DNA of 64,000 bases from Perna viridis. Lineage: Eukaryota. Of the stretch, positions 4,572 through 32,328 are shown in pieces. Both the position numbers and the translations under genes were made by a program. Position 1 is the first letter of the stretch, and each line of letters opens with the position of its first letter. Below the pieces are notes generated by a model that saw only the letters and a list, made by a program, of their open reading frames with translations, was not told where the DNA came from and did not search any database. The stretch lies in the NCBI GenBank assembly GCA_037379345.1, contig CM074523.1, positions 18,048,551-18,112,550 of the forward strand. Reading direction: 5' to 3'.

Positions 4572-5161
4572 AAAATTTATTTACACCAATATTCTCCAAC
4601 ACTCTCTACACTAAGAGGGTATTACCATACTCCAGAGGAGTCTTGAAAGGGATAGCTGCCTTTGACCAAGATCGGGCAGAATGCACATTCAGAAAGACTG
4701 CTGCTTGCCCATGTTCAAAAGTTGTTTACGGAATCATAAAGGGAGAGCACTCTGAAAGATTTCAGATTAATCCTGGTACTGGAGAGTTAGCCTATGCAGC
4801 TGATGACATTGGTTATGAGACGGAGTTCAAAGCTACGATCGTTGCAAGGAATATTGATGAATTTGGTAATCTAAACAGATCTAGCAGGTACACAGGATAT
4901 GCTAATGTTAGAATTATTGTTACCTCAGACGTTGAAGAAAGTGAAACGTTATTAAGAGAAATTTTGCCGTACCCAAATATTTACATTTGGCAACAGCAAG
5001 AGGCAGATGATGAAGAAGAGATTGATCATGTTGGTGTGGGAATTGAAGACAACATTAATAAGATGGGAGAAAAGAAAAGCAGTCTGTCATCCCCTGAAGA
5101 TTGGCTTAAATTAAAGGAAGGACCCATGGATCATGAAAAGCATCATTCAAGAGTGAAAAGG
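4572..5161 (+). CDS. Large secreted-type repeat protein, first visible exon: cadherin-like module, acidic linker, RVKR
   Basis: ttccag acceptor and gtatgt donor. TPIFSNTLY..AFDQD..VVYGII.G..ERFQINPGTGEL..ATIVARN is cadherin-like. Starts in phase 1, so an upstream exon is required. Confidence 0.85.
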
Positions 5162-6261
5162 GTATGTCTCCTCACAGAGATATTGATTATGTGATTATCT
5201 TGTCATTTGCTGAGCAATTATTCGATTTGCTAAGCGGCTATTTGACTAGACCAAATATTTCATGAATATTTGGTTGCCTACAACCATGAAAACCCTTTTA
5301 TGAAAACAAAAAGTTAATTTTTAATGATAATAAAATTTCAAGTACAGGAGCAAAGAAAATTGGGATTATGTAATTACTGGGACACCCTTATTTGAGGGGC
5401 CTCTAGATATACATACTCTATCATATTTTATCTCTATATTGAAGTAGATACAAGAAATTTGGGACTAGTTTGTATGAGAAAAACTAATCCTAGGTACAAA
5501 TCTCTACTTGGAACATTAACACACCAATATGGGGAAATTGCTCATGAATAACTACCATTCTCCAACAGCATACTACTGTATGACATAGCAGCTACAAAGG
5601 AGACAACTCTATCCTTTAATATAAAGTCGGACTAACACTTTATTGGCTAATTACTTTCCAATATTAAGAAGAAGTATAACAAACACTACTGTTCATCTTA
5701 AAATTGATCGGTGCATTAAAATTTTAATGCTCTTGTCTCTTGAAGATCTAGTCATTCTATACTGTTGTCTTCCTATCAATCCACATGGCTATGGCTCACA
5801 TATTGTGTAAAACCTTTTTAACATTTTGAAGGATTTGATAATATTTGGACATAAAGTTTTTTTTCATGGCAGCTGCATGCATAGGAAGTTTTCTTAATTT
5901 TTTTTTTGTTTTCTAATTTTTGCATTTCAGAGTTATTAATACTGAAAAAAAGGCTGTATCATGTGCTTTTAAGAACAGCTGCTTACTTTAATCTGTTTAT
6001 TCCAAAACCTCTAAAATTGTAAAATTCAATTTTTTGCATCATGTTATTTCCCATTTGCTGAATCAGTCAGTTTGTGTGTAAATTTTGCATTCATGTATCT
6101 TAACTACAAGGATATATATTAGTGTTAGGATTATTTTTGTAGAAATTTTATGACTGTAAATGTTGCAAACATTGTGGCATTTAAAGTAGCAAGATTATTT
6201 TGGGTTTCCAAGTTGTGTCAGTTTAGTCAAATAATAAGTTCCAATGAAATTATTTTCACAG

Positions 6262-6525
6262 GCTGTTACTATCAATGACTTCTCAGTCTTACTGAATTTG
6301 AACGGCACAAGTGATGGAACAGTATCTCCAGCTGACCAGTTCCTGTACCAGGCAGTTATCACAGTTCCACCAGGAGTCTCTAATTTGCTGCTTGAGATTA
6401 ACACTACTGTAACTGCCTCAAGGGCTGTGTATAAGATTTTGTATACAACTGTTTCAGATATAGGGTCCAACATTATCGTCAATGCTTCTGATGTCGCAGA
6501 GATCTCAAGTTTTGCAAATAGTGAG
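6262..6525 (+). CDS. + gene exon 2 (repeat 1, N-half)
   Basis: cacag|AVTINDF..SSFANSE|gtact; phase 0/0. Confidence 0.85.
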
Positions 6526-7136
6526 GTACTGTTAACATAGTATTTTTCATAGTACATTAAGCAGGTGTGAATTATTTTTGTGGGTATAAAGACACTAAGA
6601 TACACCTAAGTTAGCACTGTGTGAAAGCCACCTGTTGAATGGTATTTGCACAAATTTTTTAAGAATATTTACAAGAAAGGGGTTCTAACACATTCCGACA
6701 TCTGGAAAACTTCCCCCACCCGTTAGATCCTCCACCAAAATACAATTTTCACCATTTTTGCTGCAGATAAACAAACATGACATCATGTTATTGTGACTTA
6801 ATTCTGACTATGAAAATTTATAAACAGTATCAACTTGTTTTGTTTTAAATCTGGATCATATTGTCTGAAGTTGTTTAAAAATTCTGTTAAAAAACCATTT
6901 TGGACATAACGGAAGATAAAAAAAAGGCATAATAAATTGTGATGGGAATTAAATGAAAATCAACAAAATGCAAGTTGAGAATAAACAAGTGTCCTTTTTT
7001 ACCTATAAAAGCTTAAAATAGTGCAAGAATCAAATTAAACTGCCTTTTTTAACTGGCCTGTTGTATTTTCTAAAGTGAGGCAAATCTCGATTCCTTCTTA
7101 ACATATATATATATGCATTTGTCACATTCTTTTCAG

Positions 7137-7430
7137 TTCGATTCAGTTGTTGTTGGCTTTGGCTTAGTAAACAATACTGGGGTTGACATGGCAACATATG
7201 GTCCAAGTCAGATTCTTGTCACTTTCACAGCTGTTGTTATCGACAATAGTGAAGTGGTGAATGGGAACCAGTATGACATCAATGCTACATTGATTCATGA
7301 TACTGGTACAAAATTGGCTGTTGAGACATTCACAGCAGGTGAAACAACCACTGTAGGTGAAACAACCACTGTAGCTGAAACAACCACTGTAGCTGAAGTA
7401 ACCACGGAAACAGCAACTACAGCTCCTCCT
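7137..7430 (+). CDS. + gene exon 3 (repeat 1, C-half, plus Thr-rich linker)
   Basis: ttcag|FDSVVVGFG..TTAPP|gtgagt; phase 0/0. Confidence 0.88.
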
Positions 7431-8465
7431 GTGAGTTAAACATATACTGAACAAGGATGTGATTCAATTTATTTTTTTCATATACCACCACTGTCTCTGT
7501 GGAGTGGGATAGAATGTAATAACCAGAATCTCTGTCCATGTTCCTATAGGTTTGTCATCATTATACTTTTATATTACCAAGTATTGTTTATATATTTGGC
7601 CTTTTAATGTTGCCAAGGGGTTAAAAATAAACACATATTTTCTTCAGTCTCCTTGACATATACACCATTCCTATTCTGGTTATATACATATTGGTGAAGA
7701 TGCAGAAATTAAATCGCATTGCAAAAAAATTAATTTCAATAAATTGTTTTGAGAAGGAAGTAGTAGAATAATATAATTGTTATTTGTTACTTATTTATAC
7801 CCTCCATTCTTCGAGAGGTACATATAGTAATTTTGTTGAATCCCATCATTTGTCCGGCCCTGCATCTGTCCACAGTATTTTTTCCCAACAGTTTTCTTTG
7901 CCATTTCTTATTTGAGCCACTTGGTATTTTGGCAGAAACTGTATTAAGACTATATTTCAGATTAAAGTGACATCAACTTCTTATTTGGATGAGTGGGTAT
8001 TCTTTAGTAAGCTTTGCTTGTAGTTTTATTTGTGTGTTTTTATGCCCTTGACTTTTTTCCCAATGCATTTGCATTTGTGTATAATATTTTTTTTTTGTAA
8101 AATGAAGCGCAATGTCAATGACCTTGAGATTAATTTTGACCTCTGTCACATTTGAAACTGTCATTTTTAATGTATTTTGCCTTCATTTAGGAATTTATCA
8201 GAAATGTTCCAGTGATTAGGATTAAAAGAGGCCCTGTGGTTTTTTTATCACATTTCTGCTGGAAATATCCCATTGAAATCATAAATTTTTAATTGAAGAT
8301 TATTAAAAAATGACCCATTCTCAAAATTTTAATCCCAATCACTGATGTTTTTACTTTAAACCTCTATAATCACACTTGAAATGCTAGCTATCACAGAAGT
8401 TCTTTGTAAAAATATATCTTGTTTATCATGTGTATGTTATTGTTTGTTTATTGTTGCTTTTCCAG

Positions 8466-8726
8466 ACCTTTACAGTTGACTTCTCCATTGTGGAGGTCAA
8501 TAAAAGAGAAAGCATCACTACGGTTACACCATCACAGGAAGTTAAGCTGGAGGCAGTCATCACAGTGCCTCTGGGACTGTCAAACATTACACTGACCTTG
8601 ACCTCTGGCTTAGATGGTACAGCCATTTACCACTTTTGTACTTTAGGTGATGTAAGCTATGGAGAAAATCTGGTGCCCAGTGGACCATTTATTACAGAGA
8701 AAGTTTCTACATTCGAAAACTTTGAG
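8466..8726 (+). CDS. + gene exon 4 (repeat 2, N-half)
   Basis: tccag|TFTVDF..AVITVPLGLSN..FENFE|gtagat; paralogous to exon 2. Confidence 0.85.
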
Positions 8727-9399
8727 GTAGATTTTAGAAATAAGACACATTACTTTTATTTACCATTTATACCCACAAAACAAAATATTGGAGCAGGGTT
8801 TACATAGGAATCAATGAATCTGTTTGTCTTTCTATCTATTAGTCCATTTTTCTAGCACAATTCTTCCATGAAGTTTGATTGAACATTTTAAATACAAGGT
8901 GCTTGCAAAGAGAGATAATCCAATTAAAAAGGTTTTTCATGTTCAAAGTCAAATCCTTATTGCTAATTATCAACTTCTCAAGCATTTTTCTTCCTGAACT
9001 GAATCATGTTGTGAATTTATATTTCTCAGTTGTTAAGGTATGCCAGGACTTGTAGCCAAAATTCAGACTTTGTTACGCCTCCATTGCCCGAGAGATGGGC
9101 TTTTGGACCACACTTTGCCTGAGAGATGGGCCTTTGGACCACACTTTGCCTGAGAGATGGGCCTTTGGACCACACTTTGAATTGTTAGTGTCATATATAA
9201 TACACTACCTTTGATAAAATGTCTGGCATGAGCTGTCAAAATTCCCAGACCCTTGGTCTAGTTAGAGTACCAAATGTAGATGTGGAGACAAATTTAAATT
9301 TTTAATGATAGTGAGGGGAGATAATCAAACAAGCTTAAGAGCAGGGAAATTTTTTTGCTTGTTTATAGTATTTTTTACATTTTATTTTTATATCTCTAG

Positions 9400-9621
9400 A
9401 TTGACAAGGGTATCATTTACCTTGGTGAGATATCTAATGTTGGTACAGACGTCCTGACATCATATGAGCCAAGCCAGATTAGGGTCAACTTCACTGCCAT
9501 AGTTTTAAATAACATTAACCTTGGGAATGGCGACAGTTGTGGTCTGACAGCTTCAGTGGATCAGGGAGGGACGGAGACAAACTCCTCCTCTTGGTCTCTA
9601 CCTGTAGACCTGCAGTCTTTG
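9400..9621 (+). CDS. + gene exon 5 (repeat 2, C-half)
   Basis: ctctag|IDKGIIYLGEISNVG..PSQIRVNFTAIV..DLQSL|gtaaag; paralogous to exon 3; not in ORF track. Confidence 0.85.
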
Positions 9622-10297
9622 GTAAAGTAATACTTTTAACATACTAATTTTGGCAGTATACTAATTTTTGTTATTTTGGCAGTGGACAGAAAACTGCGAA
9701 GAATTTTACATTTTGAAATTGATTTTTAACACTGTATAACACTAATCATTTTTTAGAAACCATGAAAATTAATACCTGCGAATATGTTCACTTGGCAGAA
9801 TCCATGAAAATTAGCAGCCACAAAAATTAATATGCTTATAGTATTGAGGTAAAAAAAAAATCCGCACTTATATTTCATATATATGTGTTACGATATTGAA
9901 AAAAAAAAAAAAAAACACATAAATTGTGATATTTAGCTTACTCTTTAGTACTCATGAGGAAGAAAAGAGAAAAGAAGGGTAACCACAAAATTACCAAACA
10001 ATAATTTGATCCATAATAAAGTCCAAAATAAATCTTAAAAAATAGATATTAGAAGTTTTGCAACACATTTTCTGGCATTCAATGTTGAATTTTGTGATTG
10101 TTGGTAAAATTAAAATTCTTGCTTGGAGAATGAATTTAACAATAATTTTACTTGTTAAAATGACGTGCAGGATTTATTGCAAAAAAAAAAATGAAAATGT
10201 ACTGGACAACCTTGCCTATTGTCAACATTAAAATAAGATAAACCTGGCATATTTATGTTAAAAAATACTGAAATAAGATAGTATCTTTTTTCCACAG

Positions 10298-10475
10298 GAT
10301 TCTGGTACAGCCCCAGGTATTCAGATCAGTGGTCCAGTCAGTCTGGCCCCAGGACAAGTAGCTGTTTGGGCTATAACCATTGTCCTTTATGATGGGTCCA
10401 ATCCTCTAGCCCTGGATCTGTATGGCTCGGGGTCAAACCCAGTTGAACTGTGTTCTTCTGGTTTCAGAGAAGCAG
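10298..10475 (+). CDS. + gene exon 6 (repeat 3)
   Basis: ccacag|DSGTAPGIQISGPVSLAPGQ..ELCSSGFREA-G|gtgagt; phase 0/1. Confidence 0.82.
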
Positions 10476-11311
10476 GTGAGTTATAATTAAAAGATAGTAG
10501 CAATGCGTGAGCATGTAGGGCTCTAGAATTAGAAAAAAATCCTTGGGTCACCTACAACTGGCAACATCAAAATTTTGAAATTTCTCAAAAATTACTGACT
10601 GAAGTAAATAAACTCCGTAATCCTGAACTGAGGGTGTTTTGCCAAGATTGGCGACTTCAATAATAGGACTGTAGATAGGCGATTAAAAAATATGCAGCAT
10701 TTGTTATGTTGCTATGCCTTGTTTACATTACAAGATGACGGCCATTTTTTTCCGGAAGTCACAAGCAGAAAACCTAAATTACGTCACAATAGTACTCTAG
10801 ATGGTGTTTTTCATACAAAGGGGAGCTACTCCTGCAAACAGATGCTTATCAGCTGATTTTGACAGCGAATAATCTTAAATCATTTTTAGTTACTTCAGGC
10901 CTTTTATCAACAGCTTATTTACTAGATTAAGCTTCTTTTTAGATTGATTGATTGATTGTTGGGGTTTAACGCCAGAGCAGCAGTATTTTATCTATATTCA
11001 GGCGAGAAATGCAGATCAAAACACAATGGAATTTTATTCCAAGGGTTAGAGCCTATATGTTTATAACAATAAGTAAAAAGAGTTTTTCAGCTATCAATGC
11101 TACAATGGGAAATAATCCAACTTCTACTCTCCCCTGATGAAGATTTCAAGCCTTTAGTAAGTTTTTTTTGTAGCTTTGATTAATACTGTTTTATTTAATG
11201 ACAAATCAGTTCAAAAAAAAAAAAATAAAGCGTAATTTTTTTCCCTACATCATGTTCTTATTTCCCATAACAAAAGGTAAAAGATTGACAGTTTTATCAT
11301 ATTTTTGACAG

Positions 11312-11413
11312 GTTCAAACTTCAGATGTTATGATGGGAACCGAATCAAGGTTGACCCAAGTGTTTCTGGACCAACTGGATTTGTTTACACATTTGGAGAA
11401 CTTCTCAATTCAG
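11312..11413 (+). CDS. + gene exon 7 (repeat 3)
   Basis: gacag|(G)SNFRCYDG..YTFGELLNS|gtataa; phase 1/1. Confidence 0.8.
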
Positions 11414-12175: not shown

Positions 12176-12363
12176 ATTTTCTGCATGGCCTGGTAACAGA
12201 TGCTGTAAACAACTCAGTTGTAGTAGAAGTGATGGGGAGCATCCCGTACTCAGCATCTCTCGGCTCTGACTATACATTTGATGTAGATACTTATCTCAAT
12301 GGTGTAATCAGTACAGTTACCTCCCATACCATAAATATTGTATCTGGTGCATACACGTCTACT
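12176..12363 (+). CDS. + gene exon 8 (repeat 3 end)
   Basis: tatag|(D)FLHGLVTDAVNNSVVVEV..SGAYTST|gtaagt; phase 1/0. Confidence 0.82.
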
Positions 12364-12399
12364 GTAAGTGTTACCAGTACAGTTAGCTCCAATACCATA

Positions 12400-12822
12400 T
12401 GTTTGTTTGTTTGTTTGTTGGGGTTTAACATCTGAGCAGCAATATTTCAGCTATATTCAGACGATGAACATGAAATTGATGATAAAATGAACATGAAATG
12501 ATGAAATGAAAAAGGATGGGACACAAGGACAATGGGGTTGACAAATTTTGATTGCCACAGGAAATAGGGAGAGGTGGGTAGGGTCAGGCAATTTAGCCTC
12601 CTGTGGCGGAGCCCCATGGTTCCTACTCCGGGAGAATACCACAGTAGGGTTCTTTAACGTGCGAGGAACGTGGCATCTTTCCCAACACGGTGCACCATTA
12701 TGGTTTGCGGTCAGGTTTTCCATATTATAGCTTGACAACCCCAGCATTTAACATGCCAGGGGTACCCCATTCAACCACCTGGGGCACACATCCCAGCTGC
12801 TCCGTGGGCAGAGCGCCCTAGC
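12400..12822 (-). mobile_element. 5'-truncated SINE with Deu/Nin-like core and (CAAA)n tail
   Basis: Minus strand reads GCACGTTAAAGAACCC..GGAGTAGG..GGCTAAATTGCC, then ATAGCTGAAATATTGCTG..GTTAAACCCCAACAAACAAAC. Flanked by a near-identical 11-bp duplication (12389-12399 and 12823-12833). A related tail lies at ~10941-11006. Confidence 0.65.
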
Positions 12823-13199
12823 CCCATACCATAGATATTGTGTCTAGTGCATACACATCTACTGTAAGTGTTATCAGTACAGTTAGCTCCCATACCATAA
12901 ATATTATATCCTGTGCATACACATCTACTGTAAGTGTTATCAGTACAGTTAGCTCCCATACCATAAATATTATATCCTGTGCATACACATCTACTGTAAG
13001 TGTTATCAATACAGTTAGCTCCCATACCATAAATAATGTATCTGGTGCATACACATCTACTGTAAGTGTTATCAGTACAGTTAGCTCCCATACCATAAAT
13101 ATTGTATCTGGTGCATACACATCTACTGTAAGTGTTATCAGTACAGTTAGCTCCCATACCATAGATATTGTATCTGGTGCATACACATCTACTGTAAGT
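12823..13199 (+). repeat. 66-bp tandem repeat of the exon-8 3' end including its GTAAGT donor (~5.7 units here)
   Basis: Exact 66-bp period; GTAAGT at 12864, 12930, 12996, 13062, 13128 and 13194. Confidence 0.95.
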
Positions 13200-13239
13200 T
13201 TTATTATGTGTACATAAAAAATGCAATATTTGACACACA

Positions 13240-13868: not shown

Positions 13869-14204
13869 GTTTTGCCCTCAGTGAATGTCGATAAACTTCT
13901 CACTTCGACCACCAACATCGCTAAGGGAACCTCCATTGTCGTCATTGTTGATTTTTTCGTTGAACCAAATTCTGTTGATTCCTACTCTGTTGATATAACA
14001 TCCACTACAGGTGATTCAACAATCTGTGACTTTAACATCCTTTCTCAAGGGAGTAATCTCCCCTGTCAGGATTTAGAACAGACAGGTGGCACCACTGTTT
14101 ATACTTCAACAGATAATAACGTAACATTTTCGTCTGTGTCACATGACTTTGGGATGATCAGTAATATTGGGACATCAGCAAATATTATGGACATTGAAAA
14201 TAAG
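13869..14204 (+). CDS. + gene exon 9 (repeat 4)
   Basis: tgcag|VLPSVNV..QGSNLPC..DFGMISNIG..IENK|gtaaga; phase 0/0. Confidence 0.88.
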
Positions 14205-15725: not shown

Positions 15726-15869
15726 GTTTCTTTGGAAGTGGCCATCAAAGTCCCAATAGCATCAAAAGCTTCTACAATAGATGTCACAGCCAATGTCATC
15801 TCAGCCAATTTAGGAACAGCTACATCTTTACTGACCTTAAATGTTGTAAACTCTTTGATATCTGCTGAG
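15726..15869 (+). CDS. + gene exon 10 (repeat 4 end)
   Basis: tccag|VSLEVAIKVP..NSLISAE|gtataa; phase 0/0; not in ORF track. Confidence 0.8.
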
Positions 15870-16300
15870 GTATAATCGTTGTATATAATTTAAGGCCATT
15901 TAAAGTAATTTCTTGGTTTTCAGGACGTTTTCTGTGATATCTGCTGATGTATGATTGAATTGCACCATATAAGGCCATACAAAGTAATTTCTTATTTTTC
16001 AGGCCATGTTCTATAATATCTGCTGAGGTATAATTGAATTATACCATACGAGGCCATACAAAGTAATTTCTTGGTTTTCAGACCATTTTCTGTGATATCT
16101 GCTGATGTATGATGAAATTGTACCATACAAAGCCATACAAAGTAATTTCTTATTTTTCAGGCCATGTTCTGTAATATCTGCTGAGGTATAATTGAATTGT
16201 ACTATACAAGGCCATACAAAGTCATTCCTTAGTTTTCAGACCATTTTCTGTAATATATGCTGAGGTATAATTGAATTGTACCATATAAGGCCGTACAAAG
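15857..16300 (+). repeat. ~79-bp tandem repeat (about 6 units) starting in the exon-10 end and donor
   Basis: Unit (g/a)atatctgctga(g/t)gtat(a/g)attgaattgtaccata..ggccatacaaagtaatttctt..tttcag; alternating variants give a ~158-bp dimer. Confidence 0.92.
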
Positions 16301-17397
16301 TATTTTTTTTTTTTTTTTCAAGTCTTTTTTCACTGACCCTAAATATTTTCAATTCTCCAATAATTGCTGAGGTATCAGTAGTTGTGGGCGTGGCTTAGAT
16401 AGATCGATAGCTACAAAAGTGTTTTATTGACCCTAAAAACACCATGTCCAAAGCCAGTTAACCAAAGCATAAATGTGTTTTAATTATATGAGCAGTAAAT
16501 ATGATTATTTGAATACATGTATTAATGTTCCTATTGAGAACATTTACAATTGCCTCATGCTGCATGTGTGGTAATATCATCGGCTCTACCACAAGTGTGA
16601 GTAATTCTTACTGAAAAAGGTCTATTCAGAAAAACCAATACCTATAACTGTGTTGACATATTATTATACTGACTGGTAAGCAACAAGACAAAATTTAATA
16701 TTCATATACTCAACATTTTCAGGACTAAATGTAATGATATGACTTAAAGACTAGTGGATAATCTAAGTAATCGGAATGTTAAAGGTTGAAGGGAGATGGG
16801 TTGTTTATGCATGTTCTAGTTTCATTTTCTTTACCAGAATTTACAATGTAGAACGTATTGAAAATCAAAGACCAATCTGCATTGTTTACTTCCGGGTACT
16901 CGAAATGCTGTATAACAATGCAAATTCTTCTATTTTATGTTTTTTCTTACTACCTGTATCATGCAGGAATAGATATTTTTAATTTTTAATAGTATTTTTT
17001 ACACAAAATTTGTTTTGCCCTCAACTCTGGATTCAACGCTTTCTAAATGACAAGTCTCTATGCTTTTGAATGGTAGACTTGAGAAGCCAATCTCATGAAA
17101 TCACGAGGTCACATGACGAGACTTACATACCCTTTTGCATTTACCATGACAATAATTTCTGTTTAAACCAGGCCCTGAATAATCAGAAAACCTTTCTGAA
17201 CCATACACTTTTCAATGCCCCTGTATTTTCAACCTGGGTGTTTCCAACACCTGTCTAAAATAAACACTGTCTAAACCTTAAATTTATCATAAAAAAGTGG
17301 TTGGATTTTGATAGGGTTAAAAGTTTTTTGATAAAAATATTTCTGTATTAAAAAATTACAGAAAAAAAAATCATTAAATACTTTGATTTTTTTATAG

Positions 17398-17710
17398 ACT
17401 GATATCAGTGTAACCCTGAATAGTGTACCTCCAGAGCCACTTCCCGTAATACGGCACATCGCTGACTATGTCTCATGGAGTGTTCAGTTGGTCATGCCAA
17501 TAACCTCTGACAGATATACACTCATGGCTACTGCACCATTCTCTGCCAATGAAGCGCATCTGACAGTCATATCAGCTGAATATACCTATATTGGTATGGA
17601 TCTTAGCTGTAAGGATGATATTGCTATATTGTCTGAGGCAAAGTCGAGTGATGTATCTAATCAACAGTTGACCACTATAACCATAGATCTGGGATTCATA
17701 TCTTATTTAG
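17398..17710 (+). CDS. + gene exon 11 (repeat 5)
   Basis: tatag|TDISVTLNS..IGMDLSC..IDLGFISYL-G|gtatat; phase 0/1. Confidence 0.85.
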
Positions 17711-18003: not shown

Positions 18004-18241
18004 GATTTTATAATTCAACCAATGGGAACACTGTAGAGGTAGAGTTCGTTTTTAAGGTTACTGACCATCCAGCTCATGTAGGAACAACCATTCAGACCTT
18101 GACCTTTGACCTGACCAGTGATGGTGGAGCAACAGCGACAACAACAGGGGATGTTACAGTTGAGTTACTAGGGTCGGAGGTCACAGAGATGGTTTTGGAC
18201 ACTTGGTGTGAAGACACTTTTGTTAACAAGAAAAATGCAGG
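18004..18241 (+). CDS. + gene exon 12
   Basis: ctcaag|(G)FYNSTNGNTVEVEFVFKV..KKNA-GG|gtttgt; phase 1/2. Confidence 0.8.
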
Positions 18242-19058: not shown

Positions 19059-19230
19059 GGACACAATCACTGTGTATGGAGAAGCCTATCTTCTGAATAC
19101 GTCCACTGCCCATGCTGCTGATGTAAAGTTTGCTTACCTCCTGCCATCTTATGTAGCATATGTCACTTTACTGACCTACACACATGTTCAGCCAACTGTG
19201 ACTGTGGAAGCTAAGGGAGTAACTATTTTG
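19059..19230 (+). CDS. + gene exon 13 (DUF11-like Ig module, N-half)
   Basis: cccag|(G)DTITVYGEAYLLNTSTAHAADVKFAYLLPSYVAYV..GVTIL|gtaaga; phase 2/0. Confidence 0.83.
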
Positions 19231-20034: not shown

Positions 20035-20245
20035 TTTCCAGTCATTACTTTTGAAGACCATGTCAATTTTACGTTCAATGTTGAACTAGATCCTTCTGGA
20101 CATTTTGAACCCGGCATAGAAGACATTCACACAGTTATACCAGTAGATGTGACATACATGTCACTCCAGAAGGCAGGCCGTACAGATACAGCTGTTCATT
20201 ACTTCCCTGAACCTTTTATACTGGAGGTCACATTTGATGTCCCTA
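20035..20245 (+). CDS. + gene exon 14
   Basis: tacag|FPVITFEDHVNFTFNVELD..FDVP|gtaagt; phase 0/1. Confidence 0.85.
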
Positions 20246-21998: not shown

Positions 21999-22156
21999 AT
22001 GCATTCGTATCAGTGACGTCCCAGCTGCAGGCATGCCAGTTTGTTAGTTCATCAGAAGAAACACCTAATGCTGCCAGTACAGCCGTCTCTACATCTAACC
22101 TGGGCTGGAAACCTAGTATCAGAGGCTCCCCATTCTGTGGACAGGAATACCTACAA
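21999..22156 (+). CDS. + gene exon 15 (start of F5/8 type C-like domain)
   Basis: tgtag|..QLQACQFVSSS..LGWKPS..QEYLQ|gtaaga; phase 1/0. Confidence 0.82.
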
Positions 22157-23895: not shown

Positions 23896-24048
23896 CTCAA
23901 TCTTGGAAATGTGTGGCAGATAGTTGGCTTTTCAATCTATTCCCATGGTAGCAGCAATTTGGACTACATCACTACGTTTGTAGTGCAGTACAGCAATACA
24001 GGGCATGACTGGACCTCACTGATGGACAATGTCACCAATACAGAAAAG
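23896..24048 (+). CDS. + gene exon 16 (F5/8 type C-like core)
   Basis: tatag|LNLGNVWQIVGFSIY..YITTFVVQYSNTGHDWT..EK|gtaatg; matches the discoidin pattern LQ(V)DLG..V(T)G..YV(T)SF..YS.DG..W. Confidence 0.88.
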
Positions 24049-24532: not shown

Positions 24533-24719
24533 ATTTTCACAGTTTCTTTTGATAATGGTGTAAAGCAGGTCAATGATGGATTCAATGTCACCCTGATGGA
24601 ACATGAGTTCTTCAGAAAACGTTATATCAGAATTATCCCTAAGACAGCCTTAATCAATGACTGCCTCCCTGGGATCAGACTTGATGTATTTGGAATAAAG
24701 AAAAGCAATGACTATGCAG
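24533..24719 (+). CDS. + gene exon 17 (end of F5/8 type C-like domain)
   Basis: tacag|IFTVSF..RYIRIIP..GIRLDVFG..DYA-G|gtaatg; phase 0/1. Confidence 0.88.
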
Positions 24720-24888
24720 GTAATGTTGTCCACAGCTCTTGGCAAAAGCAGAAAGATGAAGGGAGATAACTCAGCTTTAGATTGTCACATTTCATTCCAC
24801 TTGAAACAGGAGCTATTACTCGTTAACATTTTCAGCAATGCCTTCTGATTATTATGATTCTGTGCATTATCGGTTTCTTGGAAAATGA

Positions 24889-25953: not shown

Positions 25954-26056
25954 GTTGTGAATCTACCTCTGCTGGTCCAATCACATTGCATGACAGGACT
26001 CTACTAGTGGAACCAGTCAGTGGTATTATGTTTGTCTGTATGGTCACTGAAGTCAA
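25954..26056 (+). CDS. + gene exon 18
   Basis: cccag|(G)CESTSAGPITLHDRTLLVEPVSGIMFVCMVTEV|gtaagt; phase 1/2. Confidence 0.78.
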
Positions 26057-26694
26057 GTAAGTTATGTACACCCAGAAAGTGGTATGGCTATACAAAATAT
26101 ATCACATCCATTCCTAGGTAGAAATAGATACTGCACTCCATAAACTGTATAACCACCCAATGTTACAGTGGATGAACCAATTTTCCTGGTATACTAATTG
26201 GCTTAGTTTTCATGATTAAATGCGTTAATGTGGCATTCTCTTCTGAATTTCATTATACCCATATGTGTTTGCCTATCCCCTGTTCTAATCAGCAGCTCCC
26301 CTGAAACCGCTGAATAAAATTTGATGAAATTTTCACAGAACCTTTATACAATGATGCCATTGTGCACCTCCTATTTTGTTCTTCCATCTTAAAGCTGAAA
26401 TCACTTATTGGGTATCTTGAATGGTTTCTGGGGAGGGCATTGGGGGTATCACCAAATGGGCTTTACTCACATTATTTCTAATTTTTACTGTTGTGATTCT
26501 ATTGTTTATAAAATTGAAAAATATTTTCCAAAAAATTAGGGTTCCAACCAATGTTGTGACTTGACTTTTCAATATTGGAGTTTATAATATAAAACTCACA
26601 AAATGTTTGTAAGTAGAGGTAAGTAGACTACATTGATGATAAGATAAAATTCATCAGATTGTGTTCAATTGAATATCATCTTTTTTATTTTCAG

Positions 26695-26744
26695 AAACCA
26701 AGTCCAGTGTTCAAGGTCTGAAGATTTAGGAAGCTTATGGGAAG
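26695..26744 (+). CDS. + gene exon 19 (50-nt exon, Asp-box SEDLGSLW)
   Basis: ttcag|(K)NQVQCSRSEDLGSLWE|gtaaag; phase 2/1 bridges the neighbouring exons. Confidence 0.75.
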
Positions 26745-27242
26745 GTAAAGGTATCAAATTTTACTTATTGACAATTTTGTGATTATTTTTTTTTTCAAAG
26801 TTTTAAGTGTAAAATTTAACTTGAATAATGATGATACTTTTTATTATGGCATCCTAATTTATGACCTTACATAAGGTAGACTGCTGTGTTTGATTTAAAG
26901 GTGGAAGTATTTCATTTTTGTTATAAAATATATAAGGTGTTTAGAAAGCAGTTGAATGTGAATGCTGTTACAATAAAAGGGGAGGTGGTATTTGAAGACA
27001 CTTTTTCAACTCCAGTTATTACCAATACACAGAAATATTGTAACATTTGTTTTAAACCATATGGCAGCATATTTGAAAGGCCACTTTGAAAGCATGTGTT
27101 TTCCTGCATTTAAAAATCCCATAAGAACATTTGTTTTAACTTGAAATGTTATTCATGGTTTTATTTTCAGAACACAATAATTACTAGTATGGTACATCTC
27201 AAAAATTAACCTCATCACAATAATTCTTGTAAAATATTTTAG

Positions 27243-27509
27243 CTATTGATGACTATGTGTCCAATGTCATTGGAGTAATATCAAACACCTCCACTGTTCT
27301 TGGGGTATCAGCTGATGGCATCTCCTACACCTGCAGTTATGATGGTGGATTTGAATGGGACCTTTGTGTAGGTGAAGAGGTGAATAGCATTCAAACGGAC
27401 CCCAACTTTATCAGTGCTAAAAATATACCCATAACTGATCTCTCTGGCCTGAGCTATGCTGCTTTGAAGACAAACTATGGATTCACATTTGGAAGTATTG
27501 ACATTAGTG
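27243..27509 (+). CDS. + gene exon 20 (Asp-box SYDGGFEW)
   Basis: tttag|(A)IDDYVSNVIGV..SYDGGFEW..IDIS-G|gtaagc; phase 1/1. Confidence 0.83.
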
Positions 27510-27614
27510 GTAAGCTTACTTGAAACTTTTGTTTTGATACATCCATCTTGCCATGAACACATTGGTCCTTACAATTCTGCTTTTGTTGAGGTAATTTTAA
27601 AGTGTTTGAAAAAA

Positions 27615-28920
27615 AGATCAAACATTGCATTGTCATAGCATGTGACATCATAATTAATCATCACTTTGTCATATTTGGTGACATCATAATCAAACATTAC
27701 ATGGTCATATCTGGTGATTCATAATCAAACATCACCTTGTCATATCTGGTGATTCGTAATCAAACATCACATTGTCATAGCTGGTGACATCATAATCAAA
27801 CATCACATTGTCATATCTTGTGACATTATAGTCAAACATGACAATGTCATATTTGGAGACATAATCAAACATCACAGTGTCATATCTGGTGACATAATAA
27901 TCAAAACATTGCATTGTTATATCTGATGATTTCAAAATCAATCATCACAATGTCGTGTCATGTGACATCATTGACAATCATCACATTGTCATATCTGGTG
28001 ACATCATAATCAAACATCACATTTTCATATTTGGTGATTCATAATTAAACATCACATTGTCATATCTAGTGATTCATAATCAAACATCACATTGTCATAT
28101 CTGGTGACATCATAATCAAACATAACATTCTCATACCTTCTGACATTATAGTCAAAAATGACAATGTCATATTTGGTGACATCATAATCAAACATCACAG
28201 TGTCATATCTGGTAACATTATAATCAAAACATTGCATTGTTATATCTGATGATTTCAAAATCAATCATCACTATGTCATATCAGGTGACATCATAATCAA
28301 TCATCACATTGTCAAATTTGGTGATACCATAGTCAAACAACATTTTTTCATATCTGGAAATTCATAATCAAACATAACATTGTTATGTCTGATTTTTTTT
28401 TCAAAATCAAACATCACATTGTCATATCTGGTGACATCATAATCGAATATAACATTCTCATACCTTGTGATATTATAGTCAAAAATGACAATGTCATATT
28501 TGGTGACATCATAATGAAACATCACAGTATCATATCTGGTGACATTATAATCAAAACATTGCATTGTTATATCTGATGATTTCAAAATCAATCATCACAT
28601 TGTCATATCATGTGACATCATTGACAATCATCACATTGTCAAATCTGGTAATACAGTAGTGAAACAACATTTTTTCATATCTGGTGATTCATAATGAAAC
28701 ATAACATTGTCATACTTGGTAACATCATAATCATACATTACAGTGTCATATCTGATGACATCATAATCAAACATGACATTGTCATACTTGGTGACATCAT
28801 AATCATACATTACAGTGTCATATCTGATGACATCATATTCAAACATTACCTTGTCATATCTGGTGACATCATAATCATCACATTGTCATATCTTTCAACA
28901 TCAAAATCAAATATCACATA
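27615..28920. repeat. ~33-bp minisatellite with a ~325-bp higher-order unit
   Basis: Monomer catcataatcaaacatcacattgtcatatctggtga-like; a diagnostic variant recurs at ~27903, ~28226 and ~28553. Confidence 0.92.
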
Positions 28921-28929
28921 AAAAGTCAA

Positions 28930-29930
28930 AATCTGATGAGGCGATCGGAACGGGTAGGAAATGCGAGGCTCCGCCGAGCTATTTCCTCCGTTCCAAGCCG
29001 AATACACATATCTTCAATAATTTTCGACAATGTACCTATATGGTTTTTATCCTGTTATATTAATAGTTTTGTGCGTGTGTACATTTTTAAAATAAAATTT
29101 TAGAATGCTTATCCCCTGAGGAGCCCCGATCGTTAAACCCGAGGGAAAAAAAATAATACGCATGGCGCATGACTCAGTAAATATTGAAATTCAATCCGCA
29201 CCATATAATCCATCAAAGCTGTTTGAAGAAAATAAACAATGTATCAAAATTTATTTAATTCCAAGAGACAAATAAGTAAAATGAACAATAAATACAAATA
29301 TTTTGAATGTTGTAAAGTTGATTTTAAGAACATTAAAGTTTTGAATTTCACGAGGAAGGTGGAAGCTGACTTGTTTATGTTTGGTATATGGCAGTAGAGT
29401 TCAGGTGTGAAATTTGTGTTTAGGCAGTAATAAATCCAAGACCATAACAGTTTCTTCAGAAGTTTTATCATATTGTAATGCTTCAATTTCTTCAAGTGGG
29501 GACCAGTTTATGTTAAATTGTGACGGACACTCTGGTTCCGAGTCCGACATGACTGAAATGACAGGGGAAGTGGTTTGCAAACTGATAATGAATCAAATCT
29601 GAACGAGATTTGGGATTTGCCATATATATGACAGTGAAAAAAATACAAACAAAATCATTATTTGGTTTACATAAAATCTTTTATTTCATTCAGGTGAAAA
29701 CCAAACAAAACAGCAAAAAAAAGATTAACTTGATACGCAATCGCAATTTGTTTATATCGTATCTATGGTGGTGGCCATGATTAATTTACACATACCAGAA
29801 AAAAGTAGTTCCGCCTATCACGTGAGTGGGAGGAGCTAGAAAGTCGATAACCTGCTAATATACGGATACAGCAAAAAAATAACCGTATACCTTTATTCGT
29901 TTAACAAATTACCTCGTTGCAGGATAAAAT
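28930..29930. mobile_element. Possible non-autonomous Crypton-like DNA element
   Basis: Subterminal GC-rich hairpin GGAACGG..AGGAAAT..GAGGCTCCGCCGAGC..ATTTCCT-CCGTTCC; internal TTTTATCCTG (~29045) inverted to terminal CAGGATAAAA (~29920). Confidence 0.35.
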
Positions 29931-30046
29931 ACAGAAACCCATCCATGATATTGTTATTGCAATCAGTAATAGATAATGGTTTGTTACAGATCAGTCGTTG
30001 ATCCATCAAACTCATTATTAAAACAGGGTTAATCTATGACCAGTTG

Positions 30047-30428
30047 TTACAGTACCTGAACCGGTCCATGCAACAACAAATGTAGTCGGTCATCAGTCAC
30101 TGATCAGTTTCCCATCGGTCATCTATCCATCAATCGGATCTATTAAACCTTTGATCGCATCTTGTGACCAAAGAGCGGTCAATGTATTTTACGGTTTTCG
30201 TTGTTTTCTGTGTCAATTTTACACATATTTATATAATGCAATTGATTAAACATCAATTTATATCTTTATTTCACATTTCTTGTGTTTTAAACATATCATC
30301 CCTCATTTTACATCACAAAACTGCGGTCAGATCGGTCAATGGTCATTGGTTATTGATCCTTCAGAGATAAATCAGTCAGCGGTTATTGATCCGTCAAATT
30401 GTTGTGCAGATTGATTCAAGGACTGTAT
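30047..30428. mobile_element. TA/CAGT MITE, second copy (inverted)
   Basis: Reverse-complement homologue of 14416-14795. Confidence 0.7.
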
Positions 30429-30937
30429 ACCCTACCATATCAAGTGGAAAGGTATGATGTGATACCCTCTGAAAAACTGCTTGTCCATCAATCCATTTTT
30501 CTGCTTGTTCATCCCCTGACGGTTTAAAGATGATTACTTAAAGAAATATTAAAGGATATATTTTCAAACTTTGTATTGTTATTTAGCATCATAAAATTTA
30601 GTTCAAGAATGAACTTGAGTTAAATCAGATTGATAAATACAAAAGTTATGGCCATTTTAGTTGCTTGCCCCCAAAGAGTTGTTTGCACTGTTTAGGGTAT
30701 CATAAAATATTCCATTAGATTTCGAATATTTTTTTACAACACATTATTCTTGATCATGCTGTTCACAGAGTAATGTATTTTGTTTTATGGTGTCACAAAA
30801 AATATGAAAAATATAAACTTTAAAACAAATTGTAAGTAATTTTATTTTTATATAAGCTTTTGCTAATAAAATAATAAACATGAGTTTAATATTTGTAATT
30901 TAGAATTAAATTTTTCCTAAAATGCTTGTATTTGATT

Positions 30938-31075
30938 TGTCTGTTTTCCATGTCTGGTCTTTGTCCCTGGATTACATTCTTTTGATTACCGTTATAACCT
31001 TGGTTCCCATGATTACCGCTATAACCTTGGTTCCTTTGATTACCGCTATAACCTTGGTTCCCTTGATTACTCTTC
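30938..31075 (+). mobile_element. Penelope-like 3' tail with triplicated 28-bp terminal unit
   Basis: GATTACCGCTATAACCTTGGTTCCC x3 ending GATTACTC. Confidence 0.75.
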
Positions 31076-31109
31076 CAAAGACATTTGATGAATCATGAAG
31101 CAAAACAGC

Positions 31110-31622
31110 AATCATTGGTTATCCGTGTGTCAGTAATCAGTTCTTACTGGTCATTGGTTACCTGTGTGTCAGTAATCAGTTCTCACTGGTCGTTGGTTAC
31201 CCGTATCAGTAATCAGTTCTTACTGGTCGTTGGTTACCCATGTGTCAGTAATCAGTTCCCACTGGTCATTGGTTACCCGTGTGTCAGTAATCAGTGTTTA
31301 CTGGTCATTGGTTACCCATGTGTCAGTAATCAGTTTTTTCTTGGCGTTGGTTACCCATATGTCAGTAATCAGTTCTCACTTGTCATTGGTTACCCGTGTC
31401 AGTAATCAGTTCTTACTGGTCATTGCTAACCTGTGTGTTAGTAATCAGTTCTTACTGGTCATTGGTTACCTGTGTGTCAGTAATCAGTTCTTTCCTGGCG
31501 TTGGTTACCCATGTGTCAGTAATCAGTTCTTTCTGGTCCTTGGTTACCTGTGTGTCAGTAATCAGTTATCATTGGTCGTTGGTTACCTGTTTGTCAGTAA
31601 TCAGGCCTTACTGGTCGTTTGT
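31110..31622. repeat. ~39-bp minisatellite (gtcattggttacctgtgtgtcagtaatcagttcttactg), about 13 copies
   Basis: Direct periodicity; generates the spurious VSVISS and SNQFL ORFs. Confidence 0.93.
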
Positions 31623-31722
31623 CTGTCATTAAGTGCTGGAATCTGTAAGAATCAAGTAAAATTGAAATGTAACAAATCATGCTCAGAAAAAGCACAATGT
31701 GGGCACGAAGTTTATTGTCTTT

Positions 31723-31942
31723 TTAAGGAGGTAGACCTAGGGTAAGGGACATAACTCATGAAGTCAGTGATATGTTTGCATCATATACAATGTCACCTAA
31801 GCCTCTCAAGCTTTCATTTGAAGCAAAATAAAATGAATCCAAGTTATTTAGATGCTTTCATAAGTTTGATGTAAAATGCCGAATACAAATGTTCCAATGA
31901 TCTTTATGAGTTGTGTCCCATACCCTAGGTCTACCTCCTGAA
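31723..31942. mobile_element. GGAGGTAGACC MITE, best-preserved copy
   Basis: ~30-bp TIR GGAGGTAGACCTAGGGTAAGGGACATAACTC / GAGTTGTGTCCCATACCCTAGGTCTACCTCC. Confidence 0.82.
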
Positions 31943-32242
31943 GACAAATTAACAGGCTGTTTATCTTAGAAGTTTGAGAAAATGCGGAAAAGTGAACTCA
32001 AAGAATGAACAGGAAAAGGAAAAAAAGTTATCTCCCTTTGATGAGGAAAGTATCATGCAATTTCATATATTTTAGACTTCAAATAACTGACACTTAAAAA
32101 TGTAATGAATTCCATGTCTGCAATAAGATTTCATTGAATATTTTCTACCATGATTCACCTACTGTCTGATCACATGAATAGGTTAAGGGATTATATATCA
32201 ATGATTTAAAGCTATAACATTCAATCAATCAATCATTTTTAG

Positions 32243-32328
32243 GTGGAGTGACAGGAGTTGTTGTTGATAGTGGATCACCCCAGACAGTTGCATGGTGGGG
32301 CACGGCAGACTGGGCTGCACAGATTTAG
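32243..32328 (+). CDS. + gene probable terminal exon 21
   Basis: tttag|(G)GVTGVVVDSGSPQTVAWWGTADWAAQI*; phase 1 matches exon 20; GC-richer than the flanks. Confidence 0.65.

What the first reader, a model, noticed from the sequence alone, without database searches (positions are those of the whole stretch)
4572..32328. Unnamed ~1,500-aa extracellular protein: cadherin-like pro-piece, five beta-rich repeats, DUF11-like module, discoidin and Asp-box tail
Seen: 21 exons join in consistent phase into 4,517 nt with no internal stop. The order is one cadherin-like module, acidic linker, RVKR, repeats, a DUF11-like Ig module (GDTITVY..N.STAHAADVKF..LLPSYVAYV), an F5/8C-like domain, then two S-x-D-x-G-x-x-W Asp-boxes. 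There is no hydrophobic C-terminal anchor. Established: F5/8C domains bind glycans, lipids or collagen; DUF11 modules are mostly known from prokaryotic surface proteins; Asp-boxes mark beta-propeller or hairpin folds. Inference: a secreted, rod-like adhesin or matrix protein (shell, glue, mucus or egg coat) with a tip binding module. I do not recognise this architecture as a named family. It is the best candidate for an undescribed system in this window.
Basis: partly seen in the sequence, partly recalled or inferred. Interest (0 to 1): 0.8.

Follow-up and report, generated by a model that had tools for sequence, protein, structure and literature searches.

The report
Unnamed secreted bivalve adhesion-type glycoprotein gene
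This is a real, single-copy, transcribed bivalve gene for a large acidic extracellular protein that is probably secreted and cut once by a furin-type protease; its domain order is unusual and its function unknown, and its only full-length relatives are two unnamed database entries.

Summary
Twenty-one AG/GT exons between 4572 and 32328 join in phase into exactly 4,517 nt with no internal stop. The module order is as described: cadherin-like module, linker, RVKR, five ~155-aa beta-rich repeats, a separate ~128-aa module, an F5/8C domain, and a tail with two exact Asp-boxes.

A spliced RNA contig joins the last exons and runs about 610 nt past the stop, so no downstream membrane-anchor exon is joined in that transcript.

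The gene starts about 11.9 kb upstream of the window, with three more exons. Their phases, and the length of the third, match the Pecten maximus orthologue.

The full-length relatives are an uncharacterised Pecten protein and a hypothetical Pinctada protein. Exon fragments add about five to six further lineages of unknown taxon. The furin-type site ends the cadherin-like exon in all nine homologues.

The repeats match no Pfam family or solved structure. The 'DUF11-like' label rests only on protein-language-model features. Pfam, profile-profile and reverse-profile tests did not support it.

Best reading: a secreted, convertase-processed, acidic, glycosylated rod with a discoidin/Asp-box head, acting in adhesion, matrix or recognition. 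Function is inferred, not shown.

The scan had separately noted the five-fold repeat on this same stretch.

The parts
4572..5161 (+). Window exon 1. It holds the solitary cadherin-like module (about 4574-5000), then a conserved hP..(I/V).(S/Y)W motif, an acidic linker and a His-rich stretch.
   Evidence: Strong acceptor. Pfam Cadherin gives 17.8 bits, below the 28.8 cut-off. phmmer reaches multi-cadherin proteins at E 1e-18 to 1e-10 and orthologues at 1.7e-18 and 2.7e-13. Alignment of nine homologues.
5150..5161 (+). RVKR proprotein-convertase (furin-type) site, the last four codons of exon 1.
   Evidence: Translation. An R-x-[KR]-R motif sits at the same exon end in all nine homologues, including the Pinctada genomic frame.
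6262..6525 (+). Exon 2: repeat R1, first part.
   Evidence: Phase 0 at both ends. R1 against R2 gives E 4e-21. Alignment A7.
7137..7430 (+). Exon 3: repeat R1, second part, plus a Thr-rich mucin-like linker (about 7338-7430; an 18-nt tandem repeat at 7340-7405).
   Evidence: tblastn to Pecten residues 341-406.
8466..8726 (+). Exon 4: repeat R2, first part.
   Evidence: Only a self-match in the organism's own genome.
9400..9621 (+). Exon 5: repeat R2, second part.
10298..10475 (+). Exon 6: repeat R3, part 1.
   Evidence: Strong GTAAGT-type donor. tblastn to both orthologues.
11312..11413 (+). Exon 7: repeat R3, part 2.
   Evidence: Phase-consistent junctions.
12176..12363 (+). Exon 8: repeat R3, part 3.
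   Evidence: I chose this acceptor because it gives a length match to Pecten (31 residues from the FG motif to the IGSIP motif). tblastn. Model.
13869..14204 (+). Exon 9: repeat R4, first part.
   Evidence: tblastn E 3e-11 and 6e-10. AlphaFold2 model with mean pLDDT 70. The G-x-N...C signature is invariant or nearly so in alignment A7.
15726..15869 (+). Exon 10: repeat R4, second part.
17398..17710 (+). Exon 11: repeat R5, first part.
   Evidence: tblastn E 3e-11 and 6e-14.
18004..18241 (+). Exon 12: repeat R5, second part.
   Evidence: tblastn E 2e-9 to Pinctada. Model.
19059..19230 (+).
   Evidence: Conserved in three species. hhalign against a DUF11 alignment gives probability 0.4%. A profile of the repeats does not detect it above shuffled controls.
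20035..20245 (+). Exon 14: second half of that module.
   Evidence: tblastn E 3e-10 and 9e-9. Perfect GTAAGT donor.
21999..22156 (+). Exon 15: start of the F5/8C (discoidin) domain.
   Evidence: tblastn E 1e-6 and 2e-8. Acceptor chosen.
23896..24048 (+). Exon 16: core of the F5/8C domain.
   Evidence: Pfam PF00754 gives 26.2-27.6 bits for this exon alone. Orthologues score 46 and 33 bits, above the cut-off.
24533..24719 (+). Exon 17: end of the F5/8C domain.
   Evidence: tblastn. Junction score.
25954..26056 (+). Exon 18: start of the tail (first strands of putative blade 1).
26695..26744 (+). Exon 19: a 50-nt mini-exon carrying Asp-box 1 (SEDLGSLW, 26717-26740).
   Evidence: I found it by phase search. 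It matches the Pecten and Pinctada motifs. Its last two bases, AG, explain why the RNA contig piece starts at 27241.
27243..27509 (+). Exon 20: tail, with Asp-box 2 (SYDGGFEW, 27335-27358).
   Evidence: RNA contig record 1 of run X1 covers 27241-27508. tblastn E 2e-11 to Pecten. Single copy in the genome.
32243..32328 (+). Exon 21, coding part: a third, degenerate Asp-box-like blade and the stop codon at 32326-32328.
   Evidence: The same RNA contig joins 27508 directly to 32242. Translation. The C-terminus resembles the Pecten C-terminus.
32329..32941 (+). 3' untranslated region, at least this long.
   Evidence: The RNA contig continues to 32941, where a highly repeated element begins.

Best explanation
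The stretch is most of a single-copy, transcribed gene. With the inferred 5' exons it has 24 coding exons and encodes 1,581 aa, spanning about 44 kb of contig C13.

**The product.** It is a large acidic glycoprotein that probably enters the secretory pathway. From the N-terminus it has:
1. a short hydrophobic start;
2. a Cys-rich piece;
3. an EGF-like piece;
4. a solitary cadherin-like domain;
5. a linker ending in a His-rich R-x-[KR]-R site.

**Processing (inferred).** A furin-type convertase cuts at that site late in secretion. This separates an N-terminal pro-piece of about 270 aa from the mature part of about 1,300 aa.

**The mature part.** It has five tandem ~155-aa beta-rich repeats of an unclassified type, with a Thr-rich hinge after the first. 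A distinct ~128-aa module follows, then a discoidin (F5/8C) domain and a ~170-aa tail. The tail has two Asp-boxes and a third, degenerate one, which I read as three propeller-type blades. There is no membrane anchor.

**Function (inferred).** The repeats form an extended stalk. The discoidin/Asp-box end binds a glycan, lipid or collagen-like ligand. The protein therefore works as a soluble or matrix-bound adhesion or recognition molecule. The pro-piece may keep it inactive until it is released.
For: **Gene model**
- 21 exons, 4,517 nt, in phase, with no stop.
- It is collinear with Pecten P0003 and Pinctada P0009.
- A spliced RNA contig in run X1 (depth about 12) joins exon 20 to exon 21 across 4.7 kb with GT..AG ends, and continues about 610 nt beyond the stop.
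- The exons searched (exons 1, 4 and 20) have no second copy in the 723-Mb genome.

**5' end**
- The EGF-like exon is at L003:7388-7479 (E 9e-5 to Pecten, all Cys aligned).
- A Cys-rich exon and an ATG exon lie at L002:8233-8338 and L002:8130-8160.
- The intron phases (1, 2, 1) and the 92-nt EGF exon are identical to Pecten.
- The Pecten orthologue starts with a hydrophobic signal-like sequence.

**Processing**
- The basic site is at the exon end in nine of nine homologues, usually preceded by His.

**Domains**
- Cadherin similarity.
- F5/8C.
- Asp-boxes are exact and conserved across species.
- ESM features of the tail are nearest to BNR, DUF6242 and Sortilin clusters, but weakly, at 0.85-0.88.

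**Extracellular character**
- The mature parts have pI 4.1-4.3 in the window protein and Pecten, and the Pinctada protein (residues 120-1480) has pI 4.2. S+T is about 20%, and there are 16-28 N-glycosylation sequons.
- No 19-residue window is convincingly transmembrane. The best scores 1.63 and is a charged, non-conserved strand region.
Against: - The function is entirely inferred. No tissue, proteome or binding data were available.
- The three raw RNA-seq runs laid on the stretch were almost silent on the last two exons.
- The three 5' exons, and so the signal peptide, have no RNA support here. The hydrophobic start is short (about 13 residues).
- Only R1 and R2 are clearly homologous to each other. 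R3 to R5 are marginal, though collinear.
- Three blades cannot close a propeller alone, so the tail's fold is a guess.
Confidence: 0.6

Rival explanations
1. It is a soluble humoral recognition protein: an immune lectin or opsonin that uses the discoidin/Asp-box end to bind microbial glycans, rather than a structural adhesion or matrix component.
For: - Discoidin-type domains can be lectins (established knowledge).
- Pfam also gives a weak NedA-like galactose-binding match (E 9e-4 in Pecten).
- The protein is secreted and has no anchor.
- Expression was low in three RNA runs, which would fit an inducible or cell-type-restricted gene.
Against: - It is single copy, and the same architecture is kept in distant bivalves at about 30% identity. 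Bivalve immune lectin families are typically expanded and fast-turning.
- A pro-piece removed by a convertase, and a long stalk, are more typical of adhesion and matrix proteins.
Confidence: 0.2
2. The repeat, discoidin and Asp-box part descends from a prokaryotic surface-protein cassette (DUF11-type repeats with a BNR and galactose-binding end). It was acquired by gene transfer and fused to animal EGF, cadherin and furin-site exons.
For: - The ESM Atlas neighbours of Pecten residues 1197-1500 are almost all bacterial DUF11 clusters (0.93-0.94).
- The tail's neighbours are bacterial BNR and DUF6242 clusters.
- hhalign puts the first 24 columns of the repeat on the start of DUF11, in register (probability 12%).
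- Bacterial sialidases combine BNR, Ig-like and discoidin-like domains (established knowledge).
Against: - The Pfam DUF11 model finds nothing in the exons, in the orthologues or in the whole genome.
- The repeat profile finds nothing in a DUF11-rich bacterium.
- Shared-feature counts are 150-160, below the 170 typical of true members.
- The best solved relatives of the discoidin domain are animal proteins: neuropilin, lactadherin and factor V.
- The gene is intron-rich, with base composition like its host.
Confidence: 0.07
3. It is an ordinary membrane-bound cadherin-type receptor whose transmembrane exon lies downstream.
For: The N-terminal module is cadherin-like.
Against: - There is only one cadherin-like module, and it lies upstream of the cleavage site.
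- The transcript contig reads a stop at 32326-32328 and then about 610 nt of untranslated sequence.
- The Pecten protein ends at the same conserved motif.
- There is no hydrophobic C-terminus.
Confidence: 0.03
4. It is a decaying or mis-assembled gene, that is, a chance chain of open frames.
For: Expression is very low in three RNA-seq runs, and the introns are full of satellites and repeats.
Against: - 4,517 nt are open across 21 canonical junctions.
- Similarity to orthologues reaches E 1e-120.
- A spliced RNA contig exists.
- Motifs are conserved.
Confidence: 0.02

Closest known systems
Pecten maximus LOC117331700 (P0003, 1,843 aa, 'uncharacterized protein') and Pinctada imbricata KAK3101081 (P0009, 'hypothetical protein / F5/8 type C domain-containing protein')
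   Same: They have the same module order from the EGF-like piece to the C-terminal W-W-G-x-x-D-W end. Identity is 30-32% over about 900 residues. The intron phases at the 5' end are the same, and so are the furin-type site and the Asp-boxes.
   Different: Pecten has two or three more repeats, one of them in a single exon. The Pinctada gene model skips the furin site and has a spurious N-terminus and C-terminus. Neither protein has been studied; no paper cites either identifier.
Classical cadherin proproteins (a prodomain with a cadherin-like fold, removed by furin)
   Same: A cadherin-like module lies directly upstream of a conserved R-x-[KR]-R site, so it is probably removed before the mature protein acts.
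   Different: The mature part has no cadherin repeats, no transmembrane segment and no catenin-binding tail. The module has three conserved Cys and lacks the DxNDN and LDRE calcium-linker motifs.
Secreted EGF-discoidin adhesion proteins (MFGE8/lactadherin, EDIL3/Del-1) and neuropilin b domains
   Same: It is a secreted protein with an N-terminal EGF-like piece and a C-terminal animal-type F5/8C domain. Its best solved relatives are neuropilin-1 b1 (E 2e-7) and lactadherin C2.
   Different: It has a single discoidin domain, about 1,000 residues of unclassified repeats in between, a convertase-removed pro-piece and an Asp-box tail.
Prokaryotic DUF11 ('conserved repeat domain') surface proteins, and BNR/discoidin-type glycosidases such as NedA
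   Same: Both are tandem acidic beta-rich modules of 110-160 aa. The language-model features are nearest to DUF11. The end combines Asp-boxes with a discoidin-type domain.
   Different: No significant sequence or profile similarity was found. This is an intron-rich animal gene with an animal-type discoidin domain.

Membership tests
Cadherin repeat (Pfam PF00028) | A match to the family profile above the curated cut-off. | tested here: not met
   17.8 bits against a cut-off of 28.8 for the window exon, and 19.1 bits for the nearest relative, P0001.
Cadherin repeat (Pfam PF00028) | Significant sequence similarity to bona fide cadherin repeats. | tested here: met
   phmmer of exon 1 finds dozens of multi-cadherin proteins at E 1e-18 to 1e-10. 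One example is P0002, which carries eight Pfam Cadherin repeats.
Cadherin repeat (Pfam PF00028) | Inter-repeat calcium-binding motifs (LDRE, DxNDN) and tandem arrangement. | tested here: not met
   There is a single module. The alignment of nine homologues keeps only the A-x-D-x-D motif, and the module ends in V-T-S-D-V-E rather than DxNDN.
F5/8 type C (discoidin) domain (PF00754) | A profile match above the cut-off. | tested here: inconclusive
   The window could be scanned only exon by exon. Exon 16 alone gives 26.2-27.6 bits against 28.2. The orthologous domains score 46 and 33 bits and match neuropilin and lactadherin structures. The joined domain was not scanned.
DUF11 / conserved repeat domain (PF01345) | A profile match to PF01345. 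| tested here: not met
   There is no hit at E up to 10 in the two whole orthologues, none at E up to 1 in the exon frames, and none at E up to 10 in the whole genome searched in six frames. The control genomes did give hits.
DUF11 / conserved repeat domain (PF01345) | Profile-profile or reverse-profile similarity to real DUF11 domains. | tested here: inconclusive
   hhalign against ten DUF11 domains from a planctomycete and a Dehalococcoidia genome gives probability 0.4% for the 'DUF11-like' exon and 12% for the repeat. The repeat profile finds nothing in those genomes. ESM features are nearest to DUF11 clusters at 0.93-0.94, with low shared-feature counts.
BNR / Asp-box repeat | The S-x-D-x-G-x-x-W motif recurring at blade-like spacing. 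| tested here: met
   Two exact motifs lie 40 residues apart, and a third is degenerate. Both exact motifs are conserved in Pecten, and the first also in Pinctada.
BNR / Asp-box repeat | A beta-propeller (or Asp-box hairpin) fold. | not testable with these tools
   The tail is split over four exons, and the joined sequence was not handed to any tool. There are only weak ESM leads (0.85-0.88).
Proprotein-convertase substrates | A conserved R-x-[KR]-R site in a secretory protein. | tested here: met
   Nine of nine homologues have it at the same exon end. Cleavage itself was not tested.

The most novel reading that the evidence does not exclude
The ~155-aa repeats would be a previously unrecognised animal branch of the prokaryotic DUF11/CARDB-type surface-repeat superfamily. 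The three-blade Asp-box tail would complete a propeller only by pairing with other chains. The mature protein would then be a tail-to-tail multimeric, bacterial-adhesin-like rod that is unmasked by removal of a cadherin-like pro-piece.
Probability: 0.12. Interest if true: 0.6.

Novelty: new variant of a known kind. Interest (0 to 1): 0.4.

Why it matters
Bivalves build shells, byssus, mucus and egg coats from secreted modular proteins, many of them restricted to the lineage. This gene defines a conserved, single-copy family. Two members are confirmed bivalves, and exon fragments of unknown taxon suggest about eight divergent lineages in all. The family has an architecture not described before:
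- an EGF-like piece and a cadherin-like pro-piece;
- a conserved His-rich convertase site;
- an unclassified repeat with a G-x-N...C signature;
- a discoidin domain;
- an incomplete Asp-box array.

If its place of action were found, it would add a new building block to molluscan extracellular biology. It would also give Pfam-type libraries at least one new domain family. For now it is an orphan with good annotation and no known function, so its importance is moderate.

Tried and rejected
**Rejected exon and module readings**
- An open frame at 29411-29599 looked like an exon. I rejected it because the RNA contig skips it and the reads there come from a repeated element.
- An acceptor at 27241 was rejected because the dinucleotide before it is TT. 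The real acceptor gives 27243, and a 50-nt mini-exon supplies the missing bases.
- A first repeat profile that included the 'DUF11-like' module scored that module highly. This was circular. A profile built without it does not detect the module.
- A candidate start ORF at L003:6838 was rejected because it has no usable donor.

**Structure attempts that led nowhere**
- The only whole repeat that lies in one exon (Pecten, L004:13363-13824) was folded with a half-covering alignment. Mean pLDDT was 51, so the model is unusable.
- MAFFT stacked first and second half-exons on the same columns, so no full-unit alignment could be built by reference.
- Reading through the 144-nt in-frame Pecten intron failed because it contains stop codons.

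**Searches that led nowhere**
- Profiles of the half-repeats against PDB sequences gave nothing significant.
- Word-based protein searches with Pecten (whole, and residues 1190-1510) and with exon 20 returned only the query or the window's own fragment.
- The search for related loci could not use the repeat alignment because it has no conserved stretch.
- Paper searches on both orthologue identifiers found nothing. Searches on discoidin with shell-matrix proteomes, and on DUF11 with molluscs, also found nothing relevant.

- The joined (spliced) protein was assembled only inside scripts. There it was used to check phase and stops, for composition and internal-repeat comparisons, and for local alignment with the two orthologues. 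It was not sent to any family, structure or database search. Those searches were run exon by exon by reference, or on the whole orthologues.

Full report
**Setting.** The window is G000:C13:18048551-18112550 of a 723-Mb, 46-contig, AT-rich (about 32% G+C) genome. The nearest full-length relatives of the gene studied here are from a scallop and a pearl oyster, so the organism is very probably a bivalve. Its name is withheld and I did not try to establish it.

**Check of the observation.**
- Stop-to-stop open frames on the + strand gave about twenty candidate exons.
- tblastn of two full-length relatives onto the window was collinear from 4574 to 27487.
- I chose junctions by splice-site score, phase and agreement with the relatives.
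- My first model had 20 exons and 4,469 nt, with a non-AG acceptor at 27241.
- The sequence showed that the true acceptor gives 27243. That shifted the phase and predicted a missing 50-nt exon.
- A phase-constrained search found the exon at 26695-26744. It has a strong polypyrimidine tract and ends AG|GTAAAG. It encodes the first Asp-box, which matches the Pecten and Pinctada motifs.
- The final model has 21 exons, all AG/GT, and 4,517 nt. It reads 1,505 codons plus a stop at 32326-32328 with no internal stop.
- Local blastp of the model gives E 1.6e-120 to Pecten and 5.9e-114 to Pinctada.

**Transcript evidence.**
- One reads call was allowed, and I spent it on 27001-33000.
- In run X1 (Logan contigs), a 1,510-nt contig of depth 12 covers 27241-27508 and then, without a break, 32242-32941.
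- That is exon 20 spliced to exon 21 over a 4.7-kb GT..AG intron. The two extra letters at 27241-27242 are the AG that ends the mini-exon.
- The contig reads the stop and about 610 nt of 3' UTR. About 540 nt more of it lie upstream of the laid stretch.
- The frame across this junction ends in a W-W-G-x-x-D-W motif, as the Pecten protein does.
- The open frame at 29411-29599 is not part of this transcript. Reads there are 95-99% alike and carry their own joints, as expected of a repeated element.
- Three raw RNA-seq runs (X8-X10) were nearly silent on exons 20 and 21 (depth 0-1.4). Expression is therefore low or restricted in those samples.

**The 5' end lies outside the window.** The acceptor at 4572 needs one base from an upstream exon.
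- In 20 kb fetched upstream, tblastn with the Pecten N-terminus found an EGF-like exon at L003:7388-7479. It scores E 9e-5 with all Cys aligned, has AG/GT ends and is 92 nt long. Its phase-1 donor fits 4572.
- A scan for Cys-rich phase-2 exons found L002:8233-8338, with a GTAAGT donor. Its C-x3-Y-x3-C-x-Q-x1-2-C pattern matches Pecten exon 2.
- That exon is preceded, across a 72-nt intron, by an ATG exon at L002:8130-8160 that ends in phase 1.
- Pecten has the same three intron phases (1, 2, 1) and an EGF exon of the same 92 nt.
- On this basis the CDS has 24 exons, 4,746 nt and 1,581 aa. The gene spans C13:18036680-18080878.
- The start is short and hydrophobic (about 13 residues). The Pecten start is a clearer signal-like sequence.
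- These three exons have no RNA support here.
- Pfam gives only sub-threshold EGF-type hits for the EGF exon.

**Relatives.**
- phmmer of exon 1 against 1.84 billion representatives gave 97 hits.
- Two are full-length with the same architecture: P0003, Pecten maximus LOC117331700, 'uncharacterized'; and P0009, Pinctada imbricata KAK3101081, 'hypothetical'.
- Seven further representatives are exon-sized fragments from unannotated assemblies. They are 21-60% identical to one another.
- One fragment lies on a 2.1-Mb contig where the EGF-like piece, the cadherin-like piece and several repeats follow in the same order.
- The remaining hits are multi-cadherin proteins such as P0002.
- Word-based searches found nothing more.
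- The exons searched (exons 1, 4 and 20) have no second copy in the organism's own genome.
- No paper mentions either orthologue identifier.

**Modules: what was shown.**
1. *Cadherin-like module.* It is below Pfam's cut-off but clearly similar to cadherin repeats. It is solitary, has three conserved Cys, and lacks the calcium-linker motifs.
2. *Convertase site.* An R-x-[KR]-R motif ends this exon in all nine homologues and is mostly preceded by His. The Pinctada annotation misses it only because it uses an earlier donor. This is the strongest functional clue.
3. *Repeats.*
   - R1 and R2 are clearly homologous (E 4e-21).
   - R3 to R5 match one another only marginally (E 0.004-0.02), but over their whole length and in register.
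   - A 15-row alignment of first halves from four genomes has an invariant Gly and a near-invariant Asn in a G-x-N..C signature.
   - Repeat boundaries fall on phase-0 introns.
   - No Pfam family and no PDB sequence matches.
4. *The 'DUF11-like' module.* It is conserved in three species. It is not detectably a copy of the repeats and fails every DUF11 sequence test. Only the ESM Atlas features of Pecten 1197-1500 point to DUF11 clusters, at 0.93-0.94 with shared-feature counts below the usual level for members. hhalign also aligns the repeat's first strands to the start of DUF11, at 12% probability. I treat this as a lead, not as membership.
5. *F5/8C domain.* It is met in the orthologues (46 and 33 bits) and is animal-type by its solved relatives. 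In the window it could only be scanned exon by exon.
6. *Tail.* It has two exact Asp-boxes and a third, degenerate one, conserved across species. ESM neighbours are BNR, DUF6242 and Sortilin clusters at weak scores.
7. *Composition.* The mature parts have pI 4.1-4.3 in the window protein and Pecten, and the Pinctada protein (residues 120-1480) has pI 4.2. About 20% of residues are Ser or Thr, and there are 16-28 N-glycosylation sequons. A Thr-rich hinge follows R1.

**Structure.**
- The one repeat that lies in a single exon (in Pecten) gave a useless model with pLDDT 51.
- Window exon 9, about 70% of a repeat, gave pLDDT 70 with four long strands.
- The fold therefore remains open. 'Beta-rich, probably sandwich-like' is all that can be said.

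**Mechanism.**
- *Shown:* a spliced transcript, no anchor, conserved architecture, a conserved basic site, and acidic, glycosylation-rich composition.
- *Inferred:* entry into the secretory pathway; cleavage after RVKR by a furin-type convertase, releasing the EGF/cadherin-like pro-piece; an extended stalk formed by the repeats; and ligand binding by the discoidin/Asp-box end.
- The pro-piece plus convertase arrangement parallels classical cadherins and other proteins whose adhesive or polymerising activity is masked until secretion.
- The His residues before the site could make exposure of the site depend on pH. This is speculation.
- I put about 0.9 on the gene and its architecture, about 0.75 on secretion with convertase processing, and about 0.45 on an adhesion or matrix role as opposed to a humoral recognition role.

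**Novelty and score.**
- The kind of protein, a secreted modular adhesion-type glycoprotein, is well known.
- The architecture, the repeat family and the conserved His-rich cleavage site have not been described.
- The only full-length relatives are unnamed automatic annotations.
- I rate it a new variant of a known kind, with moderate interest (0.4). It is solidly real and unusual, but it has no functional handle yet.
- The scan had already noted the five-fold repeat (s1-759858) and the amplified exon-end array (s1-759849) on this same DNA.

Noticed in passing
window 12819-13204 and 15858-16306: There are two intronic tandem arrays, with 66-bp and 79-bp units of about six copies each. Each begins at or near the 3' end of a coding exon (exons 8 and 10), and each repeats the exon end together with its GT donor. 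The second array starts 12 nt before the donor of exon 10. Such arrays could offer alternative donors.
   Followed up: partly
window 27617-28919: A 36-bp satellite (about 36 copies, with a higher-order unit of 327 bp) fills much of the intron between exons 20 and 21. It is open in several frames and so mimics coding sequence.
   Followed up: no
window 28800-30000: RNA reads and contigs that are 95-99% alike cover this intronic stretch in all four runs. They include a joint at 28973>29554 that carries 19 foreign letters. This looks like a transcribed repeated element from other copies, not an exon of this gene.
   Followed up: partly
window 30800-31200, 31600-31800 and 32800-33000: A short repeated element has extremely high representation in RNA (summed contig depth of 1e4 to 1e5). 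Many 'goes back about 1,946' joints link the copy at about 32980 to the copy at about 31035. It bounds the 3' UTR of the gene.
   Followed up: no
window 2327-2558, minus strand: The first 82 residues of the Pinctada protein model P0009 match this stretch on the opposite strand (51% identity). They are unrelated to the gene. They are probably a repeat-derived ORF wrongly fused into the Pinctada annotation, which also skips the furin site and ends in low-complexity Gly/Ser sequence.
   Followed up: partly
L006 (ENA ERZ24900295, contig ctg6728l, 1115715-1136242): A 2.1-Mb contig from an unnamed assembly carries a distant homologue (about 31% identity). It has the same order: EGF-like piece, cadherin-like piece, basic site, then repeats. 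The organism is unknown.
   Followed up: partly
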